Source: Zygnema circumcarinatum SAG 698-1b
Lineage: Eukaryota; Plantae; Zygnematophyceae
Assembly: GCA_037447605.1 (NCBI GenBank)
Contig: CM074816.1
Location: 1,330,525-1,394,524, forward strand
Reading direction: 5' to 3'
Length of the DNA stretch: 64,000 bases
Below are positions 2,629 to 17,158 of the stretch, piece after piece. The position numbers and the translations under genes are program-made. Each line of letters starts with the position of its first letter. Position 1 is the stretch's first letter. The notes under the pieces are model-generated. The model saw only the letters and a list, made by a program, of their open reading frames with translations, searched no databases and had not been told where the DNA came from.

Positions 2629-3042
2629 TCGCCACAACTCCTGCACCGCCGCCATCACCGCCATCCCCCCCTTCACCTCCTCCAAACCCACCACCCTCTC
2701 CACCTCCAAGCCCACCCCCTCGGCCACCGCCTCCAAACCCACCACTCCCTCCATCTCCAAGGCCACCCCCCCGTTCACCTCCTCCGACAAAACCACCCCC
2801 CCTTCCACCTCTTTCAAAGCCACCTCCCTCTCCTCCTTCTGTGAAGCCACCTCCCTCTCCGCGTCCTCCCCCTCAACCTCCGCGATCACCTCCCTCTCCG
2901 CGTCCACCGAGATCACCTCCACCAGGACCACCTCCAAGCCCACCTCCAAGCCCACCTCCCTCGCCACCACCTCCTAGCCCACCCCCCTCGCCACCACCTC
3001 CTAGCCCACCTCCCTCGCCACCACCTCCCGATACAAGAGATG
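2629..3042 (+). other. Extensin-like Ser-Pro(n) exon
   Basis: Encodes [14 protein letters not shown] repeats, with codon-varied sequence and GT-AG boundaries. Confidence 0.85.
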
Positions 3043-15000: not shown

Positions 15001-17158
15001 TACCTCCATCTCCTCCCCACCTCTCTCTCTTACTTTGCCTCCCCTCTCCGCTCGTTTCCTCCCTCCCCTGTGGGATACTTACGCCTATCATCTACTCTAT
15101 GGTAATTTGCAGATCTTCTGGTTAGGGGTCCGCAAAGCTTCACGGTGCCAGCGGGCACCAACATGAGCTGTTACACCATAATCAATGCATATGGCATCCC
15201 CAGTGCCACGTTTTTGGCTCAAAATCAGGTGATATGATTCGGTAGCTTTCATTTCTGTTCTGGCAATTATTTTTCTGAGAACCTTCACCTTCGCCCGCAC
15301 CAACTTTTTCCGGCGCTTTGTTCGTGAAAATTGACCTAAACCGTAGTTTCTTGTATACTACATTCCGTATACCTTCGATAGTCAAAATATAACTTGACCA
15401 AGTCAATAATGCCCAGAACCTGACTGTTTTTAACAGTGAAAACTGCTAAGGAAAAGTGGGAACGCGCGCTCCTGAACTGCCGCCACTTTTCTTTCGCCGC
15501 AAAACCCCCCCAATCCTTCCCCATAGTCTTGAAGTTTGAGATGGTCGACGCATAGTCAACGCATGGTCAACGCACTTGTGCGCATGCGGAAGTTGTTTTC
15601 AGAATAGGTTTCGTGCGCACAGCTCATCTATGCAAAAGATGAACCGTTCCTTTCCTTTTTATAACTCCATCACTGTGGACGTAACTTGTATCTACGTCAA
15701 TTGCATGTGTGCTCACTGGTCATTTTAATTTGCAGAATCTCAATTGTCAATCGCCTCTAATGGGAGGCACAGTGGTGAATGTCACCAACTCGAAAGATTG
15801 CTCCGTCGTTTATGCTGTAAATGAGGTGAGCCTCGGAACTTTGTCTAAGTATGGGTTGGTTATAGTTCTTAGAACTTACCACTTCCGAGTTCTTAAGGTG
15901 TCCGAGATGTTTTCAAGATTATGTTTAACTTTAAGGACTCTGCACTCTGCAGGGTGACACCTGCGCATCCATTGCAGCAATGTTCAATGTCACGTCACTC
16001 TCTGGACCGGGATCTCCCAATCCCGATTTGGACTGCTCGCAGCTTCAGCCATTCCAGCAGGTACATCATTCGTATTGGAGGTGAAAAGAACAGCTTCTGT
16101 AATTGATGACAGGAACTGCCAGAAAAGCTATGTCTTCTTCCACACAGAGCTAGGAAGGTTCGACGCTTATGGCTGAAAAGGGAAGTCACCTAAGGATTCA
16201 ACGTTTTTAAACAACGGTGGCTAAATTGGTCAAGGATTTTCATCAGCATCTGAAATAGGAAATGCTGAAATATCTGCAGACAGCAGGATTCCTTACAACC
16301 TAACAAGCACCGTCCAAGGGGTTTAAGTTACTCATTTCGCTGTGTTCAGTAGTACAACAGATCACTACACACGTGTTTCACTTGCCCCTCCAAATTAAAT
16401 GTCAAAACTTATACCTCGGCCTCTGCATTTTCTACAGGTTTGCATGCGGAGGGGTGCCCTGGCCTACCCCCAGCCGTGCACGAAGCCGTACGAGGTCCAA
16501 TGGAACGAGTCCTGCGCATCCATAGTGAGGAGCTACGTCAAGGGGGACATTTGGCGCTTCTATGAACTCAATCCCGGCGTGTACTGTGGGAAATTGCTGC
16601 TTTCGACCAGTACCAACTCTGCGCTCGGCCAGCAGGTATAAATTGCACTCGAATCCCTCTGCGATATATCCCGATATTCTGCAGTTCTCGGTGGCACTAC
16701 CGCTCAGAAATAGCTCACGTTCAGAATCACAGCGATGGCAGCCTGTTGGTTTCTCCCACATATGCCTATTCTCAAATAGTCAAATTCCAATCACAATTTA
16801 CTCTACGGAGGCTATTTCTGTCCAGCTACAGACTGTTCTCACTCCCATTTGTGGCGTAATAATATATAACGGTCCTTTTTCCTCCTTTCGCGTTTGCTTG
16901 TGGCAGGTGTGCCTTAATGCAGGAGTTGTCGGAGCAAATAAACAGTGCGCAGCGGGGTACAGGAGTTTCAAACTGCCTCCATCTTACAACTCATGCGCCA
17001 AAATAAAAAAATGTTACATTTTGGTGCCGAAGGTAAAGAAAAATCCCCCGACATTCTTAACTGCGATGGGATTTCCGTGTACCGCGACGATTGCAAAAGC
17101 TTGGGCCAAGAACGGCACATCGATTTGTGTCCCCCTAAATAATAAGGTTTGCGTTTAG
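2629..17158 (+). CDS. Multi-exon mosaic protein: extensin-like, LRR, EGF, papain (C1A) protease, EGF x2, LysM x3-4
   Basis: Phase-compatible exons: 2629-3042, 3749-3881, eleven 72-bp LRR exons (4943, 5429, 6420, 6837, 7460, 7754, 8404, 9371, 10013, 10423, 10677), 11267-11610, 12059-12244, 12650-12876, 13236-13373, 13587-13806, 13991-14173, 14517-14660, 15113-15228, 15736-15825, 15953-16060, 16438-16635, 16907-17158 (TAG). The 5' end is uncertain. Confidence 0.85.
8578..8646 (+). pseudogene. Decayed LRR pseudo-exon (copy of exon 5429-5500)
   Basis: GAGATCGGCCAACTCAGACATTTGGAAAGCCT ([11 protein letters not shown]) and the downstream GAGTTTAATAA resemble the 5429 exon and its flank. Frameshifted, with AG/GT sites lost. 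Confidence 0.65.
8975..9040 (+). pseudogene. Decayed LRR pseudo-exon (copy of exon 6420-6491)
   Basis: CTTGTACGGAAAC...ATCCCCT...GGCAGT...TCTCT is shared with the 6420 exon ([18 protein letters not shown]). The acceptor reads CGG, the donor is lost, and the copy is shorter than 72 bp. Confidence 0.65.
12059..13806 (+). other. Papain-family (C1A) cysteine protease domain
   Basis: Spliced: [18 protein letters not shown]|STCWVF (catalytic Cys), [11 protein letters not shown] (His), [19 protein letters not shown] (Asn). Confidence 0.93.
12904..13030. repeat. (GA)n microsatellite in protease intron
   Basis: Pure GA run of ~125 bp. Confidence 0.97.
13991..14660 (+). other. Two EGF-like exons
   Basis: [23 protein letters not shown] and [26 protein letters not shown] show EGF cysteine spacing. 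A third EGF-like unit is in exon 11267-11610 ([22 protein letters not shown]). Confidence 0.85.
15113..17158 (+). other. Cys-bounded LysM repeats (3 clear, 1 degenerate)
   Basis: Spliced: [25 protein letters not shown]|[16 protein letters not shown]; CSVVYAVNE|[27 protein letters not shown]|VC; [33 protein letters not shown]|VC. Confidence 0.75.

What the first reader, a model, noticed from the sequence alone, without database searches (positions are those of the whole stretch)
2629..17158. Unusual mosaic protein: extensin, LRR, EGF, active papain, EGF-EGF, LysM
Seen: the domains splice in frame into one product with no transmembrane helix or kinase, and the protease has its Cys/His/Asn triad. 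Established: plant LRRs and LysMs bind peptide and GlcNAc-polymer (chitin/peptidoglycan) ligands, Ser-Pro(n) motifs mark wall-associated HRGPs (as in LRX proteins), and C1A proteases act in apoplastic defence. I do not know this combined architecture from land plants. Inference: a wall-tethered sensor-protease that binds microbial glycans or proteins and cuts them or releases a peptide signal; a role in conjugation or wall remodelling is an alternative.
Basis: partly seen in the sequence, partly recalled or inferred. Interest (0 to 1): 0.82.

Follow-up and report, generated by a model that had tools for sequence, protein, structure and literature searches.

The report
Secreted LRR–papain–LysM mosaic protease
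This is a real, expressed gene of a green alga related to land plants; it joins receptor-type binding modules (LRR, EGF, four LysM) to an intact papain-type protease, and it belongs to an apparently undescribed algal protein family whose function has not been tested.

Summary
The architecture is real. A 26-exon GT..AG model (2629-17158, + strand) reads as one open frame of 1201 codons: Pro-rich HRGP, LRRNT, 13 plant-type LRRs, EGF, papain-like C1A protease, two EGF, then four LysM-like modules (not one). It has no membrane helix and no kinase.

In four RNA runs from four studies, a single ~3-kb contig joins LRR5-13, EGF1 and protease exons 1-3 through eleven GT..AG joints. Contig lengths, together with one run that holds none of the EGF3-LysM intron, indicate that it runs on into LysM1.

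Not shown directly:
- the HRGP-to-LRR join
- the LysM2-4 joins
- the start codon

A profile of 20 homologues matches the model from protease linker to C-terminus as one hit (480 bits). Full-length relatives exist in two EukProt transcriptomes and in about 35 Closterium proteins ("unnamed protein product"). None was found in land plants.

Other notes of this scan report paralogues with other heads in the same genome.

No paper describing the family was found. The nearest precedents are chlorophyte LysM-bearing C1 proteases.

Most likely function, inferred and untested: an extracellular protease guided by its binding modules to GlcNAc-containing surfaces.

The parts
2629..3042 (+). Pro-rich HRGP (extensin-like) exon, 414 nt, phase 1-1. 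It has 12 SPPP blocks, is 65% Pro and has no Tyr.
   Evidence: Read directly from the sequence, with counts. It has a strong pyrimidine-tract acceptor and a GTAATT donor. Its inclusion fits the contig length (452 nt upstream of the LRRNT exon = 414 + 38) but was not seen directly.
3749..3881 (+). LRRNT_2 cap exon
   Evidence: Pfam PF08263, 50.1 bits. The splice sites are predicted.
4943..6908 (+). LRR1-4: four 72-nt phase 2-2 exons (4943-5014, 5429-5500, 6420-6491, 6837-6908)
   Evidence: GT..AG sites and the 24-residue plant LRR consensus. The loose-end consensus before 7460 matches the end of exon 6837-6908.
7460..11047 (+). LRR5-12: eight 72-nt exons (7460, 7754, 8404, 9371, 10013, 10423, 10677, 10976). 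Exon-plus-flank repeats show that the array grew by duplication.
   Evidence: All joints are seen in one contig per run, in 4 runs. The repeat families are D1 and D2.
8537..9042 (+). LRR-like ORF remnants inside the intron 8476-9370, not spliced in
   Evidence: ORF text. There is a single joint 8475>9371 in all 4 runs. tblastn did not score these pieces.
11267..11609 (+). LRR13, the Cys-rich cap and EGF1. This is the last exon of the head; a phase-0 intron follows.
   Evidence: RNA joints. Pfam EGF_2 and FXa_inhibition are below cut-off. The six-Cys pattern is conserved in homologues.
12058..13806 (+). Conserved linker and papain-like C1A protease in four exons (12058-12244, 12650-12876, 13236-13373, 13587-13806). 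Catalytic residues: Gln 12232-12234, Cys 12655-12657, His 13629-13631, Asn 13689-13691. There is no I29 prodomain.
   Evidence: Pfam PF00112. RNA joints reach 13236. Alignments to papain-family structures and to homologues.
12905..13030 (.). (GA)n microsatellite in a protease intron
   Evidence: ORF text.
14030..14660 (+). EGF2 (14030-14203) and EGF3 (14517-14660), each a single phase 1-1 exon
   Evidence: Pfam PF00008, 28.1 and 26.1 bits. Both are colinear with P0014 and P0023. The contig-length arithmetic fits.
15113..17158 (+). Four LysM-like modules and the stop codon, in five exons: 15113-15228 and 15736-15825 (LysM1), 15953-16060 (LysM2), 16438-16635 (LysM3), 16907-17158 (LysM4-like Cys-rich tail)
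   Evidence: Pfam LysM, 21.0 bits on 15935-16081. The family profile covers the model to residue 1181. A model of the homologous region has four beta-alpha-alpha-beta units that match LysM structures. The link to EGF3 is inferred.

Best explanation
One multi-exon gene of a streptophyte alga, most likely a zygnematophyte, encodes a secreted mosaic protein without a membrane anchor. Its order is [HRGP spacer]-LRRNT-13 LRR-EGF-linker-C1A protease-EGF-EGF-4 LysM.

It belongs to a family with two parts:
- a constant 'chassis': a conserved linker, a papain-like protease without the usual I29 prodomain, two EGF and 3-4 LysM;
- a variable binding 'head': here LRR-EGF, elsewhere legume lectin with or without LRR.

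The head/chassis border coincides with the phase-0 intron 11610-12057.

Proposed working (inferred, not shown): the protein is exported to the wall or extracellular space. The LysM modules hold it on GlcNAc-containing polymers, either microbial chitin or peptidoglycan, or a glycan of the alga's own surface. The LRR head binds a protein or peptide. The active protease then cuts what is bound nearby. This would make it a targeted extracellular protease, most plausibly part of a diversifying defence or surface-surveillance repertoire.
For: Shown:
- One contig per run, in 4 runs of 4 studies, joins LRR5-13, EGF1 and C1 exons through 11 GT..AG joints, at word depth 59-199.
- The spliced model is a 1201-codon open frame. 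It has 47 Cys, 13 N-glycosylation sequons and no TM-like stretch.
- The catalytic Gln, Cys, His and Asn are intact.
- Run X1 holds none of the EGF3-LysM1 intron, yet its contig runs 828 nt past 12876, which equals the exons up to LysM1a plus 36 nt.
- A profile of 20 homologous chassis matches model residues 594-1181 as one domain, 479.7 bits.
- P0014 and P0023 (complete ORFs with signal peptides) are colinear with the window's exons.
- About 35 Closterium proteins share the chassis, have no TM and end in a conserved C-terminus.
- Head type changes at least twice on the chassis tree.
- The LysM fold is supported on the homologue: pLDDT 79.8, with single-LysM matches at target TM 0.66-0.77.
- The LRR array shows exon-plus-flank duplications.

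Inferred from known biology:
- LysM binds GlcNAc polymers.
- Apoplastic C1A proteases act in plant defence.
[quoted passage not shown] That the same genes also respond to wounding is in the title of Amon 1998.
Against: - No signal peptide or start codon was found in the window.
- The HRGP-LRR join and the LysM2-4 joins were not seen in reads.
- The runs hold about 650 nt more of 11100-17100 than the exon model explains, so isoforms with retained 3' introns are likely.
- Several runs hold half or more of the EGF3-LysM1 intron. Retaining it would end the protein after EGF3.
- No ligand, location, activity or induction data exist.
- The AlphaFold model of the protease part was poor (pLDDT 53). 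How a protease without a prodomain folds and is kept in check is therefore unknown.
- Some relatives carry Ser at the nucleophile position, so catalysis is not universal in the family.
Confidence: 0.55

Rival explanations
1. Same protein, but it works on the alga's own surface. It would remodel the wall or process wall proteins or pheromones during growth or conjugation. The HRGP spacer and LysM modules would hold it in the wall, and the LRR head would bind an endogenous peptide, as LRX proteins bind RALF.
For: - An HRGP module is present.
- The nearest named relatives come from the conjugating alga Closterium.
- The Volvox C1 protease VcPap-11 is induced by the sex pheromone (PMC2474614).
- The gene is well expressed in ordinary culture RNA runs.
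Against: - The family's heads are sugar- or protein-binding modules that vary between paralogues and species. That pattern is more typical of diversifying recognition than of housekeeping wall work.
- No GlcNAc polymer is known to me in zygnematophyte walls (own knowledge, not tested).
- No expression series for mating was examined.
Confidence: 0.22
2. The product is shorter than the reader's model at one or both ends.
- The HRGP exon may belong to a separate upstream gene, or be a skipped cassette. The protein would then start at an alternative first exon (3481-3574, a hydrophobic signal-like peptide) spliced to the LRRNT exon.
- The main isoform may end after EGF3, or after LysM1/2, through intron retention.
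For: - All full-length homologues go from signal peptide straight to LRRNT, with no Pro-rich part.
- Exon 3481-3574 has an ATG, a hydrophobic run and a GTAATG donor in the phase that joins 3749.
- The HRGP exon is phase 1-1, so skipping it keeps the frame.
- No in-frame ATG lies upstream of 2629.
- Runs hold 0.47-0.67 of intron 14665-15110 and about 650 nt beyond the exon model.
Against: - The acceptor at 2629 has a textbook pyrimidine tract, and the donor at 3042 joins 3749 in frame.
- Contigs carry 452 nt upstream of the LRRNT exon, which the HRGP exon plus 38 nt fits. The alternative needs a 358-nt leader containing upstream ATGs.
- Other notes of this scan describe extensin-LRR joins in paralogues. 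Those notes are unchecked by me.
- X1 has none of the EGF3-LysM1 intron.
- The LysM exons are intact, in frame and colinear with the family.
Confidence: 0.3
3. It acts mainly as a non-catalytic binding or adhesion protein, or as a decoy for microbial protease inhibitors. On this reading the protease fold is kept for binding rather than cutting.
For: - Relatives P0027/P0028 (motif QRGCADSW) and P0041 (motif QGVCSCSW) have Ser where the nucleophile Cys should be.
- No I29 prodomain is present.
Against: - The window's own protein keeps Gln, Cys, His, Asn and the NSW motif.
- Most family members do so too.
Confidence: 0.08

Closest known systems
Unnamed Closterium proteins (for example CLOP_g11113 of Closterium sp. 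NIES-67, P0056) and the EukProt transcripts P0014 and P0023
   Same: They share the order signal peptide-LRRNT-LRR-(EGF)-linker-C1A protease-EGF-EGF-LysM x3-4, with no TM. They are colinear with the window's exons and 34-64% identical within individual matched segments; the best identity over the whole chassis is 41%, to P0023.
   Different: None has the Pro-rich N-terminal part. Most Closterium members carry a legume-lectin domain between the LRR and the protease in place of EGF1. All are annotated only as hypothetical or unnamed.
Chlorophyte LysM-bearing C1 proteases: the Chlamydomonas peptidase_C1+LysM architecture (PMC2728734) and the Volvox carteri pheromone-induced protease VcPap-11 (PMC2474614, citing Amon et al. 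1998, Plant Cell 10:781)
   Same: A papain-family protease combined with LysM modules in a green alga. By my recollection of Amon 1998 (the paper was not held), the Volvox protein also has an extensin-like spacer and three chitin-binding repeats.
   Different: No LRR or EGF head is reported for them. The module order differs. I could not compare sequences. The one chlorophyte hit here (P0043) has I29 and two C1 domains but no LysM.
Land-plant apoplastic papain-like cysteine proteases (RD21, Rcr3/Pip1, XCP and others)
   Same: Cathepsin-L/papain-type C1A catalytic domain. The best solved matches are caricain, bromelain, actinidin and cathepsin S/L, at 4e-28.
   Different: The plant enzymes have an I29 prodomain and at most a granulin tail. 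This one has no I29 and carries LRR, EGF and LysM modules.
Plant pattern-recognition ectodomains: LRR-RLK/RLP, LysM receptors (CERK1, CEBiP), WAK EGF, and LRX
   Same: LRRNT_2 plus 24-residue plant LRRs, EGF modules and LysM folds. The LRR-cap-EGF1 exon also matches LRR-EGF(-kinase) proteins of Mesotaenium (P0009, P0020).
   Different: There is no TM, kinase or GPI signal. The four LysM units of the homologue's model do not superpose on the packed three-LysM receptor ectodomain (TM about 0.2). The HRGP lies N-terminal and lacks Tyr, unlike LRX.

Membership tests
Peptidase family C1A (papain-like) | Match to Pfam PF00112 above the gathering score | tested here: met
   34.6 and 68.4 bits on two single exons against a cut-off of 20.7. 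Homologues score 94-177 bits.
Peptidase family C1A (papain-like) | Catalytic Gln19, Cys25, His159 and Asn175 equivalents | tested here: met
   The motifs QGQCSTCW, VDHAV and IRNSWG align with those of papain-family structures and of homologues. Codons: 12232-12234, 12655-12657, 13629-13631, 13689-13691.
Peptidase family C1A (papain-like) | I29 (cathepsin propeptide inhibitor) prodomain in front of the catalytic domain, typical of cathepsin-L-like members | tested here: not met
   No Pfam family at E<=1 in the 67 residues before the mature domain. No PF08246 in P0014, P0023 or P0056. A 45-residue linker with a conserved R(Y/H)..x..G(F/Y/S) motif takes its place.
Peptidase family C1A (papain-like) | Proteolytic activity sensitive to E-64 | not testable with these tools
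   Needs recombinant protein.
LysM domain (PF01476) | Profile match above the gathering score | tested here: met
   The window exon piece 15935-16081 scores 21.0 bits against a cut-off of 20.9, which is marginal. The aligned region of homologues scores 25-70 bits.
LysM domain (PF01476) | Beta-alpha-alpha-beta fold | tested here: met
   Tested on the homologue P0023:780-1041, not on the window's own sequence. The model has pLDDT 79.8 and four beta-alpha-alpha-beta units. Foldseek hits are almost all LysM proteins; single-domain matches have target TM 0.66-0.77 at rmsd about 2 A.
LysM domain (PF01476) | Binding of GlcNAc-containing glycans | not testable with these tools
   Needs binding assays.
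Plant LysM-receptor ectodomain (CERK1/CEBiP type) | Three LysM units packed into one globular unit, followed by a TM or GPI anchor | tested here: not met
   Global TM is 0.16-0.23 with rmsd 15-17 A to OsCERK1, CEBiP, NFP and LYK3 ectodomains. There is no TM-like stretch and no hydrophobic tail. The inter-domain packing of the model is itself uncertain (pTM 0.61).
Plant-type extracellular LRR (LRR-RLK/RLP ectodomain) | LRRNT_2 cap plus 24-residue LxxLxLxxNxLxGxIP repeats | tested here: met
   PF08263 at 50.1 bits. Thirteen regular 24-residue repeats are listed.
Plant-type extracellular LRR (LRR-RLK/RLP ectodomain) | Transmembrane helix, with or without a kinase | tested here: not met
   The highest 19-residue hydropathy mean is 1.58 and lies within an LRR. 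No kinase exon lies in 2629-17158.
Extensin / LRX | Ser-Pro(3-5) repeats | tested here: met
   12 SPPP blocks in 137 residues, 65% Pro.
Extensin / LRX | Tyr cross-linking motifs. For LRX, also an extensin domain C-terminal to the LRR. | tested here: not met
   No Tyr in the Pro-rich part, which lies N-terminal to the LRRs.
EGF-like domain (PF00008) | Profile match above the gathering score and six-Cys spacing | tested here: met
   EGF2 scores 28.1 bits and EGF3 26.1 bits against a cut-off of 21.5. EGF1 reaches only E 0.03-0.18, below cut-off, but its spacing C-x8-C-x5-C-x8-C-x-C-x12-C is conserved in homologues.

The most novel reading that the evidence does not exclude
The family would be a kinase-free, one-molecule extracellular recognition-and-response system in the closest algal relatives of land plants. 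Ligand binding by the swappable head (LRR, lectin) and the LysM tail would not merely localise the prodomain-less protease but switch it on. This could happen by displacing or cutting the conserved linker. The protease would then destroy the bound microbe's surface proteins or release a signal peptide. That would be a sensor-effector logic parallel to, and built from the same ectodomain modules as, land-plant pattern-recognition receptors.
Probability: 0.12. Interest if true: 0.85.

Novelty: new variant of a known kind. Interest (0 to 1): 0.62.

Why it matters
Land plants sense microbes and wall damage with LRR, LysM, lectin and EGF ectodomains wired to kinases. Here the same modules are wired to a protease in a secreted protein. 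The family is expanded, and its heads differ between members, in zygnematophyte algae, the sister lineage of land plants. No land-plant member was found.

If these proteins act at microbial or wall surfaces, they would show an alternative, kinase-independent use of the ectodomain toolkit around the time plants moved to land. They would also give a tractable case of modular exon shuffling:
- one LRR per symmetric 72-nt exon;
- one EGF per phase 1-1 exon;
- an intron exactly at the head/chassis border.

They also pose a biochemical question: how does a papain-like protease fold, and how is it held in check, without its I29 prodomain?

Tried and rejected
- **Polyadenylation after EGF3.** The contigs end 125 or 152 nt after EGF3, about 30 nt past an AAATAA, which suggested polyadenylation in the following intron. 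I rejected this for run X1, which holds 0.00 of that intron's words.
- **Start exon.** Searches for an ATG exon in the right phase upstream of 2629 gave nothing convincing. Candidates are 1968-2004 (MKTRSDFLALCA) and the alternative first exon 3481-3574. The signal-like peptide encoded at 2584-2628 is probably just the translated pyrimidine tract of the acceptor.
- **The window's own protein in the libraries.** The representatives search with the LRR-cap-EGF1 exon did not find it (best identity 41%). No spliced product could therefore be handed to the tools, and homologues were used as proxies.
- **Structure.** The AlphaFold model of the whole chassis was poor (pLDDT 53, with the protease part below 50). 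Its Foldseek search only returned papain relatives at rmsd about 10 A. The idea that the linker acts like a propeptide could not be examined.
- **ESM Atlas.** It gave only generic C1 clusters.
- **Organism.** The 2017 runs that carry the same species label hold none of the words.
- **CpRLP1 of Closterium.** It is an ordinary LRR-RLP with a TM and is unrelated.
- **Literature.** Eight searches found no description of the family. Amon 1998 is not held.
- **Other ORFs at the locus.** Antisense and intronic ORFs have no Pfam match.
- **Other copies.** There are no further copies of any module elsewhere in the window.
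Full report
**What is in the sequence**

On the + strand between 2629 and 17158 lie many short open pieces. Read in order, they give a Pro-rich stretch, an LRR N-terminal cap, a run of 24-residue plant-type LRRs, an EGF-like module, a papain-like protease split over four exons, two EGF modules and LysM-like modules.

Pfam on single exons gave:
- LRRNT_2: 50.1 bits
- Peptidase_C1: 34.6 and 68.4 bits
- EGF: 28.1 and 26.1 bits (cut-off 21.5)
- LysM: 21.0 bits (cut-off 20.9)
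- EGF1: only below cut-off

I built a 26-exon model that uses only GT..AG sites. It reads as one frame of 1201 codons ending at the stop at 17156-17158. I chose the splice sites so as to keep the frame, so the open frame alone proves little. The independent support comes from RNA and from homologues.

**RNA evidence**

In each of four runs from four studies, one contig of 2.8-3.0 kb (word depth 59-199) joins these exons:
- 7460-7531, 7754-7825, 8404-8475, 9371-9442, 10013-10084, 10423-10494, 10677-10748, 10976-11047 (LRR5-12)
- 11267-11609 (LRR13, cap, EGF1)
- 12058-12244 and 12650-12876 (protease)

The contig then continues with letters that match 13236 onward. Every skipped part is GT..AG. 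LRR-like ORF pieces at 8537-9042 are skipped.

**The two ends of the gene**

The contigs carry 873 nt before 7460 and 801 or 828 nt after 12876.

*Downstream.* The predicted exons 13236-13373, 13587-13806, 14030-14203 and 14517-14660 sum to 676 nt. The next exon, 15113-15228, brings this to 792 nt.

I first suspected instead a read-through into the intron after EGF3, with polyadenylation about 30 nt past an AAATAA. Run X1, whose contig has the 828-nt tail, holds 0.00 of the sampled words of that intron. Its contig must therefore splice onward. The fit is LysM1a plus 36 nt of the next exon.

Other runs hold 0.47-0.67 of that intron, so partly unspliced RNA exists. A retained intron would end the protein 31 codons after EGF3.

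The runs also hold 0.39-0.47 of the words of 11100-17100, whereas my exons explain 0.30. Roughly 650 nt more is present. Retention of the three short 3' introns would fit, but I could not test this.

*Upstream.* The 452 nt before the LRRNT exon fit the Pro-rich exon (414 nt) plus 38 nt. I found no in-frame ATG or convincing start exon.

An alternative first exon at 3481-3574 would join the LRRNT exon in frame. It would give the signal-peptide-to-LRRNT order that all homologues have. The Pro-rich exon is a phase 1-1 symmetric exon behind a strong pyrimidine tract, so it may be a cassette. I put its inclusion at about 0.65.

**Properties of the product**

The model has these features:
- no TM-like stretch
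- 47 Cys
- 13 N-glycosylation sequons
- 13 regular LRRs
- 12 SPPP blocks without any Tyr

The catalytic Gln, Cys, His and Asn are intact.

There is no I29 prodomain. In its place is a 45-residue linker with a motif conserved across the family. The catalytic domain is of the cathepsin-L/papain type; the best solved relatives are caricain, bromelain, actinidin and cathepsins S/L.

**Relatives**

The window's own protein is not in the protein libraries: the best identity to the LRR-cap-EGF1 exon is 41%. That search did find P0014, a complete 1468-residue EukProt ORF. Its order is signal peptide, LRRNT, about 26 LRRs, EGF, C1 protease, two EGF, LysM modules and a Cys-rich end.

Searches restricted to the protease-to-LysM region of P0014 and to the EGF-to-LysM region of P0023 found the following:
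- P0023, P0052 and P0053 (EukProt)
- P0041 (a Logan assembly)
- about 35 proteins of Closterium strains, named only 'unnamed protein product' or 'hypothetical protein'

The Closterium proteins have the architectures LRR-C1-EGF-LysM (for example CLOP_g11113) or LRR-legume lectin-C1-EGF-LysM.

No land-plant protein appeared. The only hits outside this family were:
- a Chlamydomonas C1 protein without LysM
- bacterial C1 proteases
- LysM-only proteins, including one from the fungus Psilocybe cubensis

Further points on the family:
- P0014 and P0023 are colinear with the window's exons from EGF1 to LysM3.
- A profile of 20 homologous chassis hits the spliced model as one domain, residues 594-1181, at 479.7 bits. 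This is the main support for the LysM2-4 exons belonging to this gene.
- None of the relatives has a TM-like segment behind the protease, and most Closterium members end in a near-identical C-terminal motif.
- Some carry Ser at the nucleophile position.
- On a quick maximum-likelihood tree of the chassis, the lectin-headed P0052 groups with the LRR-EGF-headed P0023 and P0014 (support 99), away from the Closterium lectin clade. Head type therefore changed at least twice. The window's protein sits on a long branch.
- The LRR-cap-EGF1 exon also matches Mesotaenium LRR-EGF and LRR-EGF-kinase proteins. The head resembles a receptor ectodomain.

**Structure**

A model of the whole chassis of P0023 was poor (pLDDT 53) and gave only papain matches. 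The LysM region alone modelled well (pLDDT 79.8) as four beta-alpha-alpha-beta units.

Foldseek returned almost only LysM proteins. Single fern and Volvox chitinase LysM domains matched at target TM 0.66-0.77. The packed three-LysM ectodomains of CERK1, CEBiP, NFP and LYK3 matched only at TM about 0.2. The modules are therefore LysM folds, but the arrangement is not shown to be receptor-like.

**Gene anatomy**

- Twelve of the thirteen LRRs are each one 72-nt phase 2-2 exon; the thirteenth shares an exon with the cap and EGF1.
- Exon-plus-flank repeats show that the LRR array grew by duplication.
- EGF2 and EGF3 are each one phase 1-1 exon.
- The head/chassis border is the phase-0 intron 11610-12057.

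This layout lets modules be added or swapped without breaking the frame.

**Comparison with what is known**

Eight literature searches found no description of this family. Precedents for part of the architecture exist:
- A peptidase_C1+LysM architecture was catalogued in Chlamydomonas and noted as lost in angiosperms (PMC2728734).
- The Volvox C1 protease VcPap-11 is induced by the sex pheromone (PMC2474614, citing Amon et al. 1998).

From memory, that Volvox protein has an extensin-like spacer and three chitin-binding repeats and also responds to wounding. The paper is not held, so this is recollection.

Other notes of this scan report paralogues in the same genome with NIDO, ricin-B, CBM14 or legume-lectin heads, and an 'undescribed algal protease family with swappable heads'. 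I did not check those loci. My results from other species agree with them.

**Verdict**

The two ends remain inferred.

The most likely reading is a secreted protease that its LysM tail and LRR head direct to particular surfaces. It is one member of a diversifying zygnematophyte family. Whether those surfaces are microbial or the alga's own remains open.

The closest named relatives are Closterium species. The 2017 runs that carry the same species label hold none of the words.

Noticed in passing
window 19925-21050, 25854-29159 and 42794-45354 (- strand): Three tandem genes for cytoplasmic-type protein kinases lie next to the mosaic gene. Their kinase exons are near-identical in text, and one has an N-terminus MGCFSSKP, an acylation-type start as in plant RLCK-VII/PBL kinases. 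Pfam confirms kinase pieces.
   Followed up: partly
window 48869-50806: A (GA/CT)n microsatellite of about 1.9 kb. Many shorter (GA)n runs and Pro/Ser/Leu low-complexity ORFs occur throughout the window.
   Followed up: no
window 36958-38007 (- strand): A single 350-codon exon with a Nucleotid_trans (PF03407) match at 38.7 bits. It found no relative at E<=1e-10 in the 5.8-billion-protein search.
   Followed up: partly
P0027, P0028 (Closterium) and P0041 (Logan): These family members have Ser instead of Cys directly before the conserved Trp of the active-site motif (QRGCADSW, QGVCSCSW). They are possible pseudo-proteases or carry a changed nucleophile.
   Followed up: partly
window 14661-15112: The intron between EGF3 and LysM1 is held at 0.47-0.67 in several RNA runs but at 0.00 in X1. 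If retained, it would give a LysM-less protein that ends 31 codons after EGF3 (stop at 14753-14755).
   Followed up: partly
runs X8-X10 (2017, study P6): These runs carry the same species label but hold none of the sampled words of this well-expressed gene. They may come from another strain or species under the same name, or from a condition in which the gene is silent.
   Followed up: no
window 32561, 33478, 40705, 42924: Four assembly gaps of 10 N each.
   Followed up: no
window 3481-3574: A short ATG-started hydrophobic ORF ([16 protein letters not shown]...) with a GTAATG donor in the phase that joins the LRRNT exon. It is a possible alternative first exon.
   Followed up: partly
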